Below are positions 12,278 through 20,657 of a stretch of DNA of 64,000 nt, one piece after another; positions within the stretch are counted from its first letter, which is position 1; each line of letters starts with the position of its first letter. Origin of the DNA: Auanema rhodensis (lineage: Eukaryota; Animalia; Nematoda); NCBI GenBank assembly GCA_964057225.1, contig OZ059897.1, forward strand, positions 12,524,001 to 12,588,000, given 5' to 3'. The notes below the pieces were generated by a model. It made no database searches. It worked only from the letters and a program-made list of their open reading frames with translations, and was not told the origin of the DNA. The position numbers and the translations under genes are program-made.

Positions 12278-15200
12278 TTAATAACGATATAACTTAGCCT
12301 GTTCTCGATTGGCTGAAGTTCGATGTTCTCCACCTAATGTGTAGTAGGCAGATGGGTCATTTGGATAAGATACGTATGGTTGCGTTGACGGTGGGCGGGT
12401 TGATGATGGTGGAGGAACACCAGGCAGGGTTTCCTCGTGCTGTTGCGATTTAGAGCCAACCTGGAACAAACAGATTTTTTGTTGTTGTCTATATGGTTGT
12501 CATCTTCTTTTATTTTATTTTCTATTTATGTCTTTACTACTCTCCACTTTTTTGCCAATCTATCGTTTCCTCCCCCCTTTTACTTTTTTCTCTCTTCTAC
12601 TTCTCTGCTACTTCTTCCTTTCGCTAATTTTCTAGTCTTTGGACCACAATCAATATTCTCAGCTATTTTTCGTTCTTAGAGATAAATGGAATAGGAGATG
12701 CCAAAGAGCAGAGAGAAAATCCTGATGTGTAGCGCTTTTTTGCCGGTGGCCTTATTCCTCAGTAGTAATTTATTTATTTTAAGTGTTGTTTGTTATGATA
12801 GTTTTTAGTTCAAATGTAAAAATCTCACCTTAGTATACCATTCGTGATATGTTGTTTCTCCTACTCCATCTGGAATTCCTTCTTGTTCTACTCCTGGTGG
12901 ACTTGGCTGGCCACTAGGCTTTGTTGAAGCAGTTGTAGTTTGTGAGTAATGTCGATGATAAGCGGCATTATCAAAACCCAATGGTGCTTTCTTCATTCCC
13001 ACTAAATAATGATAATTCTTGATTGTCCGGACGGTTTGCAAATGAAAAAAAAAAGAAAGAAAAAGCAATAACTCACTCGTTCCATATGGATAATTGGGTG
13101 GTGGAATAATTGGGTATGAACTCTGGAAATGAAAGAATAAATTGATTTGAAGGTAATACCAAACATACATAACGTCTTGAAGATCTACACTTGCAAATTA
13201 AACAGCATGTACAAGCAATAGCCAAAATAAGAAGAATTGAAGCACTTCCGATGATGACGATGTTACGTAAGAGGTCGGGAGACATAGAAGCTTCCATGAT
13301 TGGATTTTCTGAAAAAAAATTTATTTGGTATATATTAAGTTACATTTGCTTGGTTTCTATAAAATAAACAGAAAATTTGATAACTTACCAATTTCTTTAG
13401 CTTTCACAGTGCTTGCCTCGATAGCTAAGTCGCCAATCTTTCCACGAATAGCATTCTCTTCTAATAAGCTCTTAATTTCAATTGGACGAGGTACAGACTT
13501 AGTTGAGAGAACCTGAAAAAAAGAAAAACCATTTAGATTCAACTATTTTAGTATGTTTTACTTCAAACTCAGCGATAACGGATCCCTTTGAGTATTCGAA
13601 GATCTTGGATACCTGCATTCCCTTCCATCTTTTATCGAGCATACCATTGATCTGGAGAAAACAAATTACTTAACACGAAAACAAGTTTTTTCAAACTTAC
13701 AGCTGAGGAGACTTGTTTAGTGAAGCTCTGATAGTATTCCGTTTGAGGATCAGCAAGAGCTGGGATATATTCGCGATTAAGAATACGCACCCAGAGACGG
13801 TAGCGAGATTTAACTGGTTCAGTAGGTTCGTAAACAGTGTAAGCTGAAACAAGAATTGTATCAGAAGTCGTTACATTCGATGACGTCAAATTACCTGGTT
13901 TCTTAATAAGAGGTGGCATCTGAACTGTTGGCTTAATAAATGGAACATTGGATGAGTCAACAGGTTCATTAGGAAGACTGGTTGTAGTAGTGACTGGCTT
14001 CTTCTTTTCTGGAGTCTTCTCAGCAATCTTTTCGGTAACTTTCTCAACTGTAGTCTGGGTGGTTGGTGGAGCAGAGGTTTCTGTAGTTGTGGTGGATGTC
14101 TGTCCAACAGTTGTGAGAGTTTTATCAACAGAGCAAGTTCCCAAGCAGATCTGAATAGATAAACTTGAAAAGTGTGGATTTAGAATATTATATTTCTACC
14201 TTGTTATTGCTTACAACAGGTGTATCAGCATGCTTACGTAATTCGCCATTCTTCTCAATAATTCCAGAACTTGGAGTATATAGAAGATATACACACTTTT
14301 GAAGATTAATATCATCTTTATCTTCACTGAATAATTCACGAGAGAAGTTAGCAATGAGAATTCCTTCATTATATAATGTCTGAAAATTAATTAATTCAAT
14401 TATTCCATATATATTAAAAAAAAAAAAACTTCAAAAAACATACCTCAACATCAAAAATATCTTGCTGTTCATCAACAACTGGTCTACCGTAATGAGGCAT
14501 GAACTGATCAGTTACTGTAGCTAGCCCATCTTGACTTCCCATGATGATAACATCAGATTGAGCCATGCTTCCATCGATGGAGAATCCAAGTGCAGACCAT
14601 TCGTTTTCATTGAGAGAAGTTTTAACTGTGAATCGAGCAGTGGTTCCATCACTCATCCAAGATATAACGTATGAGCACTCTTCACCCTTACATCCATCAG
14701 GATGAGAATAGGTTCCAGTGCAAGTTGATTGTGTAACATGAATTCCATGCTCGGTTGGCTCAACCTTCTTATCTATAAATGAACAACTTTAATTGGTATT
14801 CTTCAACTTATAATTTACCTTCGAAGAAGTCAATACTTAATACTCCACGTTGATTCTTTCCGTGATATTTGAAAAATCCTGGGGCAAAGAAGTTTGGATC
14901 AGCCTGAATAGCTGGGCCTCCAGTAGTATGTTGGTAATTTTCAGGATCAGCTCCCTTAGACCAAATAACTGTCATAGGTCCAGGTGTGATGGAGTGATCA
15001 TACTTATCCGAGCCTAGAATGCTCACAATGATTCTGCTAATTTCAGTTGATGTTTCTTACTCTTTAATTTTCTTCTGAACACAACAGTTGTGATTCCATC
15101 TTCATAGAAGGCAGCAGAAGATTCTAACGTATCTTCTCCACCAAAGAAACTGTCAGGTCTTGGAGTAGCCTTGCTTGGAGAGTAGAAGTCTTTTACACGT

Positions 15201-18200
15201 CCACGTCCATCAACAACAGCTCCAACAACCATGTCCGTACATTCCATAGCATTACCTAAGATATATAACATAGTAAATCATGTTAATATATCAACAATAT
15301 TATTAGAAGTTAATACTTAATTCAAATTTAATTTTTCACGTAATCTACACTTGCAAACTATTTTAATATCATTTTCATCTATGTTGCTGATGCAAACGGT
15401 TGTTCTCTCTTCGTTTTCGCGCTTTGGAAGCTTAATTGATATTATTTCCTAATCTAATAAAATTTTTTCGAGCATATCAAGAAAATTTGTCATACTCCGC
15501 ACTTTTATCAGTTTTCTATGAAACGTTTCAGCATAAATAAATTGAAGCTTACCACGTTTAGGATTTGGTGGCTGGACAGCAGCTTGTCTACGGACTCTGA
15601 CCCGAATCGGCGCCTTATCAGTGGTTATTGATACTCCTTTTTCATCACAGAGACAGATCTTGTTGGTGCTAACGCGTGGCTGGTACAAATCATGATAACC
15701 TGCAAACATCCTCGATCGTACTTAATGAGACCTCTTTGAAACACTGGTTAAAATTTCGAGAAAAGATTCTTATCAAAGTACTTTCGATGTACATGAGGAT
15801 ATTCCAAGAATTTTGAAATCAAATCTAATCAGCTAACCAATGGCACGAAAGATGGTACGAAAAATTAAAAAAAAGGGGAAATTAACGTTTTTCGTTATTT
15901 ATTTAACAAAAAAAACTTACCGATTGGAGTACGTGGATTAGTGAAGTCGCTGCTCTTCTTAGCAATTACACGCCCACCACCAATTGGATACATGAAATAA
16001 TAGCATTCATCAAGTGGGAAATCAGTCAAAGGATCAGAAGTTATAACTTTTCTCTTGAAGGATATTGTCTAAAAATACTGATTTAGAAACAGAGCTGCCT
16101 AAAGCATTTGAACCTGCATGTCTTCAATCATTGAACCACCGATATCATAGATATCTTGACGATCAGCTGGATCAATTGCAGGAAGTTGTCGTCCATAAGC
16201 AAAACGATCAGTTACAAATGCTTTATTTTCATAAACCCATCCGGTGTATATGTCACTGTTGGCCATTTGTCCATCTCTGAAATAGTCATGAAAATTATGA
16301 ATTCAAACTATTATCTTCATACTTAGAGAATCCAATTCCAGTCCATCTTCCCATATTTCTGCTAGAAATATTGAATTGAACTTCCTTGTTATCAGAAATA
16401 TATTTCCATCTAGCAATGTACTCGCATTCAGAATCTTGACAGTCAAGAGGATATCTATATTCTGTTTCGCATTTAGCTTGATTGCCAGCTGAAATTTATT
16501 TTTGAGATATGAGAGGTTTTTAAATTATTTTCTTACAGTTCACAGGCTTCTTGTCTTCATTGCAGTTACGGATACATACTTGTCTATCGGATACAAGAGG
16601 AGTGTCAGAATGAATTGTGACGTTTCCACTCTGTTAACATATTATTTTAAAATTAAATTCATTTCTATAAGTACTTACCTCATCGAGTTTACCACCAGAA
16701 ACTGGGAACATGAGCTTCCAGCATTCAGATGAGAATTGCTTGTCGGCTTCATCTCCAGTATCACGTTTGCGGATGAATTGAGCACGAAGAAGCCCATTCT
16801 CATGTGTTCCAACAACAGAGGTAACATCATTCTTTTCGTCAAGTTTTGGAGCTCCATATCCTTCACTGGTCATATCGTGAACAGATAATACTCCGTTGAA
16901 GGATTTGACAATAATCATATCAGCTCCCACCATAGTTCCATCAGCACTAAATCCGACACCGGTCCATGAGTTAACATCCATCTTAGTTTCCAAAGAGAAT
17001 TCAATCTCATCAGAGTCTTCAACATAATTCCAATTCAACTTATACTGACAATCTAATTGGCATCCAGCGGGGAAACGGAATTCTCCATAACAAACATCTC
17101 CATCAACTTTAGGCTTGAGCTCACGTTTAGGAGTTGTTCGTGTAGCTGTAGTAGTAGTTACAGCAGGCTTTGATGTTGTAGTAGGAGAATCTAATTCACA
17201 ATCTCCCCAGTAGACACAGATTCCTTGAGAGTTTCTGGCATACCCTTGCAAGCAAGCACAACCTGGTTCTGAACACTTGGTACATTCATCTCGGGTGAAA
17301 ATTGTTTGACAATCAGCTTCACATAAGTTTCCACATTCGTTGATTGTTTCGTTAACAGCACAAGTTAATGGAACAATAGGTACAGATTTGGAGTGAGATG
17401 TGGTCATGGTGGTTGGAATAGTAGTTGTGCTTTCAGCTCGGACTTCTACAGTAACTGGCTGAGAACTCTTAACAACTTCAGTGGATGCTTCGGATTCATC
17501 ATTGTGGAAGTGAGTTTCCAAATCAGGACAATCTCCCCAATAGATGCATTGTCCATTGTGGCGAACATAGTTATCAGCACAAGTACAATCAGGCTTTTCA
17601 CAACTAGCTGGGCATGGAGCAGTGTCATACATGTTGGCACAGCTAGGTTCGCAAGCTGTTCCACACTTAGCAAAAGTAGAGTTAGCAGGACATGAAGGCT
17701 CTTGCTAAAAATTTATATTTTAATAATTGTATTTATTTATTTCAAAGTTATACCTCTTTATCGCAAAAATCGAATGGTACGCAAGCATCTTCCTCATTTG
17801 TCATACGGACGTAACCTTCTTTGCAAATACATCTTGGGGTTCCACATTGTCTTGGACAGTTTGGAATAGTCTCTGGGAAACGAGTCCAATCACATGAAGC
17901 TTCACAATCACGAGAAGTTTCAGCACATTCAGTCCAAACTTCATTTGGTCCACATTGCTCACCTATAGATAAATTAAATAATAAACAAGTTATATATACG
18001 GTATGGTACCACTATCTTTGGTTTCATGTTCGATAGCTGATTGGACTACGGTATTATTATTTTGGAAAACATGATGTTCAGGAACCTTGATTTCGATTTT
18101 CTTGAGATGAGCTTTAGCTGGAACGATATGAGCATGATATGTTATGTTTATAAATAAACATACGATCTTCCTGTGGAATCATGCTTTCACAAACATAATC

Positions 18201-20657
18201 AACTGGCTTAAACCCAATAGCAGCCCAGGATTGTCCAGGATAGCGTAAAACCATTTCAATTTCGTTCTGAAAATCCGATCTCTGTTATCAAAAACTTTTT
18301 TTTGAATTGTAAGCTATACACTTACTCTTAGAATTCTCCAAAAAATCTTATTATCTTTAGCTTCTCTCATATTATACAGAGACTCGTCAAAATCAGACAA
18401 AGAACGGAAAACGGTTGATTCTAAAATGATGTTTTCAGTTAATTTGTGTTCTGTTTAGTTGACTGTTAACCTTTTTCACAACGTACTCCATGTCGTTCAC
18501 TTGGGCAATAGCATTGTGTTCTTGGATCATCAGCATTCTTCTTGCAAACTCCTTGAACTCCACAATCATCATTTGAAGTACATTCTTCTATAAATAGATG
18601 TTTCGTTATTTATTGCTAATTTCCAATTCTTTCATTATTTGTTATTCAAAAAACAAATGACTAACCAGCATATTGACATTGGCTACCAGAATATCCACTA
18701 TCACAAATGCATTTTCCGCCAATTCTTTTACCTCGTGTAAGACATGAATCACCATCGGGAATTGCTGCAATTTAGATATTTGTCATCAGTTTCATTTAAC
18801 ATGTTTCAACTTTACAAATAGTTTGTTAAAAGTTTTTTTCATTTTATACGAACAGCATATTTGCTCTAAAGATATTTTTCATTTTAATGCTAACGTTCGA
18901 CAGATGTAAAGCGTAATATCAGGGTACAGAAGTGGTTGAACAAGAAGGGAAGAGAGGGAGGGGGGTGGTGGCTGCTAAAATGACCGACCCAAATTTGACA
19001 ACACTTTCTATCGTCGTTCAACACCATGTATAATGTCTTAGGTCAAGAAAATTTCGTTTATTGTTCAAATTCTCTTGGTACATAGCCAGCCGATGACTAG
19101 ACACGCTTTTGGCGTTGTCTTTTACAAAAAAACGACATCGTTCAAGTTTTTGACGACACAGTCTTCATCATAGACGACGTCTGTGGTCAGCGCTCATAAT
19201 GCTGTTCACTCCAGTAATTGTCATTGACCATAAAATCATATAAAATTGCATTTGTTCTTTTGAATACATGTATCAAATAGAAAAAAAGGTGATTCTATGC
19301 ATTCAATAGCTTAATTTTGCAAAAAAACAGTTGGAAAAACTTTTGAAAAATCACGATAGAGTCACATAAAAATCATTATATTGGGTGAAATTATGTTTTT
19401 GAGGAAGATTTGTAGTATTTTTATGAATAATTTTAGTTCAAGTTGTATTTTTTGAAGTGTTAATCTATAATACCTTTAACGATATTGACATCAGCACAAC
19501 TGTAGAAAAAGTATTCTTCACCATATTCGGTAGCTTGATGAGTCAAACGAATGGCACAGTTCATACACTCAAAATGAGCTGGTAACTCAACAGTTTTAGA
19601 TGATTGTCTGAAGGTAATTCCATAAAAATTTTTTAAAATATCTGAAAAGTTCTTACGTGATATTGTATTCATCACGGAAATTGGCAAATATAGCAATAGG
19701 CTCATCCAAAGCATTCAATACTTCCAATCGGATTCCTCCCTAAAATAGTAAATATGATCATAACTCCTATTCATTGATTTATTAGAGTTACATAACTCAT
19801 AAGTTTCATAGTTTGATTATATAACAATTTATTATTAGTTGGTTGATTTAAGATCTTTATGAGATTTAAGTAATAAGAGACCAACGATATAGTAACGGCC
19901 TCCAGAATAACCTTGGCCTATGAGGGAGAGCTAAGCCTAACTAGTTGCGGAATAGATCAGAGATAAAGATAGATAAAGATAGTTAACATTGTCTCTTTAT
20001 ACTATTCTTTTGGTATATAAACTAACTATTATAAAGAGCATTTTTTGGATATTTTATAGACATTCATATAGTTGATACGTCATATGTAACTAATAAATGA
20101 AAATTTGAAAACGAATAAAGAAATATTTGAAAAAATTATTTTAATTAAATAAATTAAAAATTTTATTTGGGTCTTAATTAGTAAAATAACTTACCATATG
20201 TGGAATTGCTGTAAACCATTCGATATCAACAATTGAACCAGATTCCAAGAATGTTCGGACACCTAGAACAATGCTTTAAAGAAAAATTAAATTTTTTTTT
20301 CCATAGATTTGACCAAAAGATTGAAAAATTACAATACTTATGCAATAATTTCTTGAATAGAACATATAATTTATTTTTTTCTCAAATGTTATAAGGTCAT
20401 CTTCAATAGAAGAAGTAAAACTTAAAGAAAGAATGAATACTATTTTCTTTGAAAAAGAAGAAAAATCTGATGAATCTTCAGAGATACTTACCATCATTGG
20501 CACCGGGCTTAGGTAGACCACATGCTCCTTGAGAGTTGTGATTAGAAAAATAATCAAGAGAAGGTGAACGAGCTGCTGGATAAGTTAATCGAACATGACT
20601 ATATGCTTGAGCTATTAATAGCAATAAGAGAAATGGTAATGAGAGCCTCCACGGCAT
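12278..20657 (-). CDS. Type I membrane protein, ~1,700 aa: signal peptide, His-brace LPMO-like domain, 2xEGF, split DOMON enclosing 3xTIL and 2xDOMON, a fourth DOMON, S/T-rich stalk, SEA, TM and cytoplasmic tail
   Basis: ATG at 20657 directly follows a TTCCAG acceptor. N-terminus MPWRLSLPFLLLLLIAQAYS|HVRLTYPAAR; EGF CICDSGYSGSQC; TIL CGPNEVWTEC, CPANSTFAKCGTACEPSC and CAVNETINEC. DOMON cores WTGVGFSADGTMVGAD, WTGIGFSKDGQMANSD, WSALGFSIDGSMAQSD, and WAAIGFKP...AMECTD. SEA with KGSVIAEF; TM IVIIGSASILLILAIACTCCLI; stop taken from ORF 12278-12469. The last exon is less certain. From memory it resembles C. elegans C09F9.2 (unverified). Confidence 0.9.

What the first reader, a model, noticed from the sequence alone, without database searches (positions are those of the whole stretch)
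14140..18352. All four DOMON domains retain the Met/His b-heme ligand pair: a candidate extracellular electron wire
Seen: Met in the GxM..xD loop and a late His in every domain: AMECTD/FKYHG, GTMVGAD/VTIHSDT, GQMANSD/IGYHDL and GSMAQSD/LRKHADT. Known: heme-type DOMONs (cellobiose dehydrogenase cytochrome domain, SDR2/FRRS1, AIR12) use Met/His axial ligation, whereas sugar-binding DOMONs lack it. Inference: up to four hemes are arrayed between the membrane and the N-terminal copper site. There is no cytochrome b561 in the chain, so an outside reductant or partner would be needed.
Basis: partly seen in the sequence, partly recalled or inferred. Interest (0 to 1): 0.8.

Follow-up and report, generated by a model that had tools for sequence, protein, structure and literature searches.

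The report
Four heme-type DOMONs behind an LPMO-like head
A conserved but unstudied nematode cell-surface protein (C. elegans orthologue C09F9.2) carries four DOMON domains that all keep the Met/His pair used by fungal and plant DOMON cytochromes to hold heme, behind an N-terminal copper-enzyme-like (LPMO-fold) head, so it may be a one-chain extracellular redox machine, though heme binding is still untested.

Summary
A 25+-exon gene on the minus strand (about 20657-12305) is supported exon by exon by 5.6-kb RNA contigs from four runs. It encodes: signal peptide, LPMO-fold module with an N-terminal His, 2 EGF, a DOMON split by a 700-aa insert (3 TIL + 2 complete DOMONs), a fourth DOMON, mucin stalk, SEA, TM and a conserved tail.

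All four DOMONs have Met in an S-x-D-G-x-M-x-x-x-D loop and a late His (M979/H1091, M652/H743, M827/H929, M1175/H1265).

- A profile of the DOMON-C orthologues puts the Met on heme ligand Met74 of cellobiose dehydrogenase. Heme-free DBH has Leu there.
- The Met-His spacing (102) equals that of MtCDH. Whole-domain structural alignments place the His within about one residue of CDH His163/176.
- The pair is invariant in DOMON-C and nearly so in D across nematodes. In B and A it is lost in some lineages, often both residues together.

No cytochrome b561 is in the chain.

Heme binding, Met-His geometry and any "wire" function remain inferred. The linear "between membrane and copper" picture is complicated by the nesting. 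Similar LPMO-like plus Met/His DOMON arrays occur in arachnids, a hairworm and an abalone. I found no literature on this family.

The parts
12305..20657 (-). Whole gene, at least 27 exons. Orthologue of C. elegans C09F9.2, about 1650 aa.
   Evidence: Collinear tblastn with P0002 and others. Splice search. RNA contigs. Orthologue named. The last three exons (about 13140-12305) are placed only roughly.
19474..20657 (-). Signal peptide plus LPMO-fold module (aa 1-150). Mature N-terminus is His21 (20597-20595); second conserved His is His77 (20200-20198). Four exons.
   Evidence: Pfam BIM1-like PF20238 at E 0.002, below threshold, on the orthologue. AlphaFold model pLDDT 82. All top PDB matches are LPMOs: AA15 TMq 0.68, AA10, AA11, X325 0.63.
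18471..18764 (-). Two EGF-like domains (aa about 154-222).
   Evidence: Pfam EGF_2.
18164..18420 (-). DOMON-A, N-terminal part (first strands, up to ...AAIGFKP, aa 223-275).
   Evidence: An HMM built from DOMON-B/C/D matches the joined N+C halves contiguously (hmm 19-108; 43.7 bits against 33.2 for the C part alone). Junctions are in the RNA contigs.
17195..18117 (-). Start of the 700-aa insert: a linker exon and three TIL domains with Ser/Thr-rich spacers.
   Evidence: Pfam TIL. Same arrangement in the orthologues.
16562..17104 (-). DOMON-B (aa 595-759). Met652 at 16933-16931, His743 at 16612-16610.
   Evidence: Pfam DOMON E 2e-31. Orthologue alignment A2.
15644..16477 (-). DOMON-C (aa 772-945). 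Met827 at 16266-16264, His929 at 15694-15692. The most conserved domain.
   Evidence: Pfam DOMON plus a weak CDH-cyt hit. A1 alignment: 77% mean column identity, Met and His invariant. Met aligned to CDH Met74. Model and fold searches.
14820..15255 (-). DOMON-A, C-terminal part (aa 976-1105). Met979 at 15247-15245, three residues after the insert ends. His1091 at 14864-14862.
   Evidence: The Pfam DOMON match starts at profile position 40 exactly at GNAMECTD. Lineage table.
14133..14728 (-). DOMON-D (aa 1121-1281). Met1175 at 14566-14564, His1265 at 14232-14230.
   Evidence: Pfam DOMON. A3 alignment. RNA-corrected donor at 14200.
13389..14132 (-). Thr/Pro-rich mucin-like stalk and SEA domain with a G/SVI motif (Gly1431, 13585-13583).
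   Evidence: Weak Pfam SEA in the window; above threshold in C. elegans. The motif is read from the sequence.
13167..13308 (-). Transmembrane exon (aa about 1495-1518), followed by a conserved cytoplasmic tail in the downstream exons.
   Evidence: The loose end of the RNA contig maps to 13279-13308. Hydrophobic stretch and tail conserved in P0002 and P0153.

Best explanation
The four DOMON domains are b-type cytochrome domains. [quoted passage not shown] They sit on the outside of the cell on a mucin/SEA stalk, in the same chain as an N-terminal LPMO-fold, His-brace-type copper module.

The most likely job is to take single electrons from an outside donor and pass them between mobile cytochrome domains to the copper site. 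The donor could be ascorbate or a separate cytochrome b561/ferric-reductase-type partner. This is what the CDH cytochrome does for fungal LPMOs.

Shown here: the gene model, the DOMON fold, the position and conservation of the Met, the absence of b561, and the LPMO fold of the head.

Inferred: the residue-level equivalence of the His, heme binding, electron transfer, the donor and the final substrate (chitin or matrix oxidation, or copper/iron reduction).
For: - Pfam DOMON hits on all four domains.
- A profile of 25 DOMON-C orthologues aligns its invariant Met with Met74 of MtCDH cytochrome (4qi3). The same column is Leu in heme-free DBH.
- The Met-His spacing is 102, the same as MtCDH 74->176 (ligand numbers from PMC10784544).
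- The Pfam CDH-cyt match in C. elegans spans 796-920, so it includes both M816 and H918.
- The closest AlphaFold DB Swiss-Prot folds are FRRS1L and FRRS1/SDR2. The FRRS1/SDR2 orthologue CG8399 also matches, and its DOMON has published putative ligands M286/H379 in a closely similar loop motif (PMC10691727).
- Conservation: C invariant, D nearly so. Both ligands of B are lost together in Globodera and Heterodera. Both ligands of A are lost in Tylenchina and Syphacia.
- Over 353 DOMON domains, His without Met is rare: 2 of 172 in the family and 0 of 18 outside it.
- The N-terminal module has an LPMO fold. It travels with Met/His DOMON arrays in arachnids, Gordionus and Haliotis.
Against: - There is no experimental heme data for any member of this family.
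- The His equivalence rests on spacing and alignment ranges, not on a residue-level structural alignment. MAFFT even misplaces the DOMON-C His relative to B and D.
- The nematode domains score below Pfam's CDH-cyt gathering threshold (about 23 bits against 27).
- DBH, which has no heme, is the top structural match.
- His is lost alone, with Met kept, in DOMON-B of Dictyocaulus, Syphacia and D. destructor, and in DOMON-A of filariae. The pair is therefore not strictly coupled.
- There is no electron source in the chain.
- B and C sit on a long excursion, and heme-heme distances are unknown.
- The DOMON-C model is only moderately confident (pLDDT 75).
Confidence: 0.55

Rival explanations
1. The DOMONs do bind heme, but the protein is a heme-binding or heme-handling receptor, or a cell-surface metal (Fe3+/Cu2+) reductase serving uptake, rather than a relay feeding an LPMO-type oxidation. 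The N-terminal module would then be a BIM1/X325-like copper-binding (non-catalytic) domain.
For: - The only Pfam hit for the head is BIM1-like copper acquisition factor (also in Haliotis). X325 matches with TMq 0.63 and TMt 0.57.
- CYBDOM proteins with the same DOMON ligands are ferric/cupric reductases (PMC10784544, PMC10691727).
- Nematodes are heme auxotrophs (my own knowledge, not tested here).
- The N-terminal His is replaced in some filariae and Tylenchina.
Against: - Six-coordinate Met/His heme is typical of electron carriers, not of heme transporters.
- Similar LPMO-like plus Met/His DOMON arrays occur in an abalone and in arachnids.
- The best fold matches for the head are catalytic LPMOs (AA15, AA10, AA11).
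Confidence: 0.2
2. The DOMONs carry no heme. They are structural or glycan/matrix-binding modules of an apical extracellular-matrix protein (as proposed for Knickkopf-type DOMON proteins). Met and His would then be conserved for fold or other ligand reasons.
For: - DBH DOMON, which has no heme, is the best structural match.
- The EGF, TIL, mucin and SEA context is typical of matrix and mucin-like proteins.
- Ligands are lost in DOMON-A and DOMON-B of several lineages without loss of the domains.
- The nematode domains score below Pfam's CDH-cyt threshold.
Against: - The Met column is exactly the CDH ligand column, and it is Leu in DBH.
- Met and His are invariant in DOMON-C from Trichinella to Caenorhabditis.
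- His is almost never kept without Met.
- The Haliotis homologue passes the CDH-cyt threshold (147 bits).
Confidence: 0.2
3. The four-domain, nested arrangement is an annotation or assembly artefact, or reflects alternative splicing that never joins all the parts in one protein.
For: The N and C parts of DOMON-A lie 3 kb apart, with complete domains between them.
Against: - Single RNA contigs of about 5.6 kb in four runs carry all the junctions, from 18766 to 13389, base for base.
- The same order is found in more than 30 orthologues, including C. elegans.
Confidence: 0.03

Closest known systems
Cytochrome domain of cellobiose dehydrogenase / PQQ-pyranose dehydrogenase (CAZy AA8; PDB 1D7B, 4QI3, 6JT6), the natural electron donor to fungal LPMOs
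- The Met is in the same loop column.
- The Met-His spacing is 102, as in MtCDH.
- It is functionally paired with an LPMO-fold copper module.
   Different: - Sequence identity is only 12-16%, and the nematode domains fall below Pfam's CDH-cyt threshold.
- There are four copies in one membrane-anchored animal protein, fused to the LPMO-like module itself.
- There is no flavin or PQQ dehydrogenase domain to supply electrons.
CYBDOM proteins (SDR2/FRRS1, Drosophila CG8399, plant HYP1/CRR) and AIR12
   Same: - Classical Pfam DOMON.
- A closely similar S-x-D-x-x-M...D loop and a late His, taken as heme b ligands (PMC10691727, PMC10784544).
- FRRS1L and FRRS1 are the closest AlphaFold DB Swiss-Prot folds (TM 0.62-0.68).
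- Extracellular location.
   Different: - No cytochrome b561 domain; a single-pass TM instead.
- Four DOMONs, one of them split.
- An LPMO-like head instead of a reeler or DM13 module.
Dopamine beta-hydroxylase / MOXD1 DOMON (PDB 4ZEL)
   Same: Best sequence and structure match in the PDB. Some orthologues are auto-named MOXD1.
   Different: - DBH has Leu at the Met column and no heme ligands (PMC4846438).
- There is no Cu2 monooxygenase domain here.
LPMOs (AA15, AA10, AA11) and LPMO-like X325/BIM1 copper proteins
   Same: The N-terminal module begins with His directly after the signal peptide and has the LPMO fold.
   Different: - No Pfam or CAZy family membership (BIM1-like scores 19 bits against a threshold of 27).
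- The module is small (about 130 aa).
- Copper binding and activity are untested.
- It is fused to cytochrome-type DOMONs.

Membership tests
Heme b (cytochrome-type) DOMON, as in CDH cytochrome/AIR12/CYBDOM | DOMON beta-sandwich fold | tested here: met
Heme b (cytochrome-type) DOMON, as in CDH cytochrome/AIR12/CYBDOM | Axial Met at the loop position of CDH Met65/Met74 | tested here: met
   The HMM alignment puts the invariant Met of DOMON-C on Met74 of 4qi3, while DBH has Leu there. The same column holds Met in A, B and D of the window.
Heme b (cytochrome-type) DOMON, as in CDH cytochrome/AIR12/CYBDOM | Axial His at the position of CDH His163/His176 | tested here: inconclusive
   - His is invariant in C and present in 24/25 orthologues in D.
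- Spacing is 102 in C (the same as MtCDH), 91 in B, 90 in D and 112 in A.
- Whole-domain alignment ranges place it within about 1 residue of His163/176.
- The Pfam CDH-cyt match 796-920 of C09F9.2 includes H918.
- No residue-level structural alignment could be obtained.
Heme b (cytochrome-type) DOMON, as in CDH cytochrome/AIR12/CYBDOM | Met and His face one pocket; heme b bound (Soret/alpha bands) | not testable with these tools
   Structure prediction returns no coordinates and models no ligand. Spectroscopy is needed.
Pfam CDH-cyt (PF16010) / CAZy AA8 | Score above the family's gathering threshold (27 bits) | tested here: not met
   Scores are 22.9, 23.6 and 21.4 bits for DOMON-C of three orthologues, and 17.2 bits for C09F9.2. 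The Haliotis homologue passes with 147 bits.
CYBDOM (cytochrome b561 + DOMON) | Cytochrome b561 transmembrane domain in the same chain | tested here: not met
   No b561 hit in any exon or in full-length C09F9.2. There is one TM helix.
LPMO / LPMO-like X325 (N-terminal module) | His as first residue of the mature protein, and the LPMO immunoglobulin-like fold | tested here: met
   The sequence reads ...AQAYS|HVRLTYP. His is conserved in clade V, Plectus and Steinernema. All top PDB matches are LPMOs.
LPMO / LPMO-like X325 (N-terminal module) | Family-level sequence membership; copper binding by a His brace; oxidative activity | tested here: inconclusive
   BIM1-like matches at E 0.002 and 19 bits, below the 27-bit threshold. 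The second His (His77) is conserved, but its placement in the brace was not checked. Copper binding and activity are not testable here.

The most novel reading that the evidence does not exclude
An ancient protostome family (nematodes, arachnids, hairworms, molluscs) is a self-contained, membrane-tethered extracellular redox machine. An LPMO-type copper head is wired in one polypeptide to an array of Met/His heme b DOMON cytochromes. It would be the animal counterpart of the fungal CDH-LPMO pair. It would act on chitin or apical matrix, or on copper/iron uptake, and would be fed by an as yet unknown membrane or soluble reductant. In heme-auxotrophic nematodes it would also be a large extracellular heme client.
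Probability: 0.3. Interest if true: 0.85.

Novelty: new variant of a known kind. Interest (0 to 1): 0.66.

Why it matters
Heme-type DOMONs are known mainly from fungi (CDH) and plants (AIR12, CYBDOM). In animals the heme has only been inferred, for SDR2/CG8399.

Here a phylum-wide, uncharacterised nematode gene puts up to four such domains in one chain with an LPMO-fold head. The C. elegans orthologue C09F9.2 is named in only one open-access paper, in a gene list. If the hemes are real, several things follow.
- Animals would have a fused cytochrome-LPMO-like system.
- The question of what reduces animal LPMO-like proteins in vivo would get a genetically tractable model in C. elegans.
- Heme-auxotrophic worms would need to supply several hemes per molecule to the secretory pathway.
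- The gene is present in many parasitic nematodes.

The domain-in-domain architecture, with the insert three residues before the Met ligand, is also unusual.

Tried and rejected
- Looked for the window's own protein in the databases. It is not there; the closest orthologues are 57-60% identical. Structure work therefore used Haemonchus orthologue ranges, not the window sequence.
- PDB profile searches with DOMON-B and DOMON-D hit only DBH and did not reach CDH.
- Joint MAFFT alignment of the four domain types misaligned the DOMON-C His. It put Asn of TNPRTP under the B/D His. I judged this an alignment error, because the His-to-terminal-Cys distances agree (12, 13 and 12 residues after the RNA correction).
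- Tested whether the gene is C. elegans chondroitin proteoglycan CPG-22, a DOMON protein. CPG-22 is T10E9.3, and the orthologues here have no SG at 382/399. Rejected.
- Tested a gene-model artefact or exon skipping as the explanation for the split DOMON. Rejected by the RNA contigs.
- Literature searches for nematode LPMO or DOMON fusions found nothing relevant.
- Looked for a b561 gene nearby. The long ORFs elsewhere in the window belong to a perlecan-like gene, and no b561 was seen. That scan covered only ORFs of 130 aa or more, so it is weak.
DOMON-A, B and D were therefore not modelled.
Full report
**What is there**

The window is AT-rich eukaryotic DNA with short GT-AG introns. The finding lies inside one large gene on the minus strand. 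I built its exon chain in three steps. First, six-frame ORF pieces. Second, collinear tblastn hits of full-length homologues found with the largest exon. Third, a splice-site search scored against five orthologues.

Transcriptome contigs from four runs of one study carry the same mRNA. A single contig of about 5.6 kb runs from beyond 13389 to beyond 18766. Between 13701 and 17960 it holds 3249 nt, exactly the sum of my exons. The RNA corrected one donor (the exon ends at 14200, giving ...LRKHADTPVVSNNKICLGTC). It also revealed a 51-nt intron (13894-13844) and fixed the start of the TM exon at 13308.

**Architecture**

In order along the chain:
- signal peptide;
- a ~130-aa module whose mature N-terminus is His21;
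- two EGF domains;
- the first strands of a DOMON (DOMON-A, up to AAIGFKP, aa 275);
- a 700-aa insert holding a linker, three TIL domains with Ser/Thr-rich spacers, and two complete DOMONs (B, aa 595-759; C, aa 772-945);
- the rest of DOMON-A, starting at GNAMECTD (aa 976-1105);
- DOMON-D (aa 1121-1281);
- a Thr/Pro-rich stalk;
- a SEA domain with a G/SVI motif;
- one TM helix and a conserved cytoplasmic tail.

The split of DOMON-A is real.
- Pfam's DOMON match on the C part begins at profile position 40, exactly at GNAMECTD.
- An HMM made only from B, C and D matches the joined halves across the junction (hmm 19-108; 43.7 bits against 33.2 for the C part alone).
- The RNA contigs join all the parts.
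- More than 30 orthologues have the same order.

The earlier notes s1-373198 (nesting) and s1-373126 (His-brace head) on this window agree with what I find.

**The observation**

The four Met residues fall in one alignment column, inside S-x-D-G-x-M-x-x-x-D in B, C and D (G-N-A-M-E-C-T-D in A). Each His lies 12-13 residues before the terminal Cys strand in B, C and D, once the RNA-corrected exon is used.

**Is it the heme pair?**

For the Met the answer is yes, at the level of homology. A profile of DOMON-C from 25 nematodes (A1) hits the cytochrome domain of M. thermophilum CDH. It aligns ...SRDGQM... with ...SLGGPM..., that is, with Met74. The same column in human DBH, which binds no heme, is Leu (DBH statement from PMC4846438; CDH His176 and the HYP1 M90/H174 pair from PMC10784544). 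The loop is close to the SXDXXMGXD motif described for CYBDOM/SDR2/CG8399 DOMONs, whose Met286/His379 align with the CDH ligands by HHpred (PMC10691727). It has one extra residue between Met and the final Asp.

For the His the evidence is indirect but consistent.
- Met-His spacing is 102 in DOMON-C, identical to MtCDH (74->176). It is 91, 90 and 112 in B, D and A. Known cases are 84-102.
- Pfam's CDH-cyt profile, although below threshold, aligns with 796-920 of C. elegans C09F9.2, spanning both M816 and H918.
- The closest predicted folds in Swiss-Prot are FRRS1L and FRRS1/SDR2.

**Conservation**

The family is present throughout Nematoda, from Trichinella and Trichuris to Caenorhabditis.
- **DOMON-C** is the most conserved part (77% mean column identity), with Met and His invariant.
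- **DOMON-D**: Met invariant, His in 24 of 25.
- **DOMON-B**: both residues are replaced together in Globodera and Heterodera (Leu and Pro), and apparently in Trichinella and Trichuris. His alone is lost in Dictyocaulus, Syphacia and Ditylenchus destructor.
- **DOMON-A**: Met plus KYH are kept in clade V, Steinernema, Parascaris, Pristionchus and Mesorhabditis. Both are lost in Tylenchina and Syphacia. Filariae keep Met but lose His.

Over 353 DOMON domains from all proteins fetched, His without Met is rare: 2 of 172 in the family and 0 of 18 outside it. These copies are not phylogenetically independent, and many C-terminal columns were gaps.

So the window's species, like C. elegans (all eight residues kept), has the full set. 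The family can live with fewer, and DOMON-C is the universal candidate cytochrome.

**The rest of the interpretation**

The N-terminal module was modelled from 22 orthologues (pLDDT 82). It matches only LPMOs at the top of the PDB list: AA15 TMq 0.68, then AA10, AA11, AA9, AA16 and X325 at 0.63. Its only Pfam hit is the BIM1-like copper acquisition factor, below threshold. The mature N-terminal His and a second His (PHMGG) are conserved in many lineages but not all.

The same head is found with EGF and arrays of Met/His DOMONs in a scorpion, a mite, the hairworm Gordionus and the abalone Haliotis asinina. The Haliotis protein has eight DOMONs and passes Pfam's CDH-cyt threshold with 147 bits. 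This recurrent fusion is the best argument that the head and the DOMONs work together.

The simple picture of four hemes in a row between membrane and copper does not fit the topology. Because DOMON-A is split, the head, EGFs, A and D form the trunk, and TIL-B-C is an excursion leaving A three residues before its Met. Linkers are short (B-C 13 aa, C-A 31 aa, A-D 16 aa). Inter-domain electron hopping by mobile cytochrome domains is therefore conceivable, but nothing here measures it.

**Mechanism proposed (inferred)**

Each DOMON holds one six-coordinate heme b. An external one-electron donor (ascorbate, or a separate b561/ferric-reductase-type membrane protein) reduces a membrane-proximal or exposed heme. 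Electrons then pass between domains to the Cu(II) of the LPMO-like head. The head either activates O2/H2O2 on a polysaccharide (chitin of the eggshell or pharyngeal lining) or releases Cu(I).

The rivals are a heme- or metal-handling receptor without LPMO chemistry, and heme-free matrix-type DOMONs. Both are given with their evidence in the Rival explanations section.

**Novelty**

The Met/His signature of heme DOMONs is textbook (Iyer et al. 2007, cited in PMC4846438), and multi-DOMON CYBDOMs are known. What seems undescribed is this family. The C. elegans orthologue C09F9.2 (O62055) is annotated only as an EGF-like domain-containing or uncharacterised protein. It appears in one open-access paper, in a gene list. 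Searches for LPMO/DOMON fusions or nematode LPMOs returned nothing relevant.

I therefore class it as a new variant of a known kind: known cofactor-binding domains and a known partnership (cytochrome DOMON to LPMO), in a new fused, nested, membrane-anchored animal architecture. All functional statements await spectroscopy.

Noticed in passing
window 13583-13585 (Gly1431), exon 13651-13562: The SEA domain carries ...EYSKG/SVIAEFEV..., the classic G/SVVV-type autoproteolysis motif of mucin SEA domains. The whole redox ectodomain may therefore be held non-covalently on its membrane stub and be sheddable.
   Followed up: no
window 15255-15245 and 18206-18204: The 700-aa insert (3 TIL + 2 DOMON) enters DOMON-A between ...GFKP and GNAMECTD, only three residues before the putative heme-ligand Met. 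This is a domain-in-domain arrangement at the cofactor loop.
   Followed up: partly
window about 12305-13140 (tail exons): The cytoplasmic tail is strongly conserved across clade V (GFDNAAY, HYSQTTTASTK, GETTYHEWY, PYVSYPNDPSAYYTLGGEHR) and has Tyr-based motifs. This suggests trafficking or a cytoplasmic partner. The exon borders here were placed only roughly.
   Followed up: no
window about 35700-60000, + strand: Exons encoding I-set, LDL-receptor class A and Laminin B domains. This is probably a perlecan/unc-52-like gene next to the DOMON gene.
   Followed up: partly
P0008/P0201 (Haliotis asinina), P0190 (Centruroides), P0199 (Brevipalpus), P0112 (Gordionus): The same LPMO-like head plus EGF plus arrays of Met/His DOMONs occur outside nematodes. 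The abalone protein alternates eight DOMONs with seven SEA domains.
   Followed up: partly
window 16624-16616 (Asn739-Val-Thr): An N-glycosylation sequon sits four residues before the putative His743 ligand of DOMON-B (SGNVTIHSDT). A glycan there could affect access to the heme pocket.
   Followed up: no
P0160 (Cylicocyclus nassatus), P0156 (C. auriculariae), P0192 (Mesorhabditis spiculigera): Several database orthologues look like faulty gene models: garbled stretches in DOMON-B, an insertion inside the LPMO-like module, and a duplicated C-A-D block. They were not used as evidence of ligand loss.
   Followed up: no
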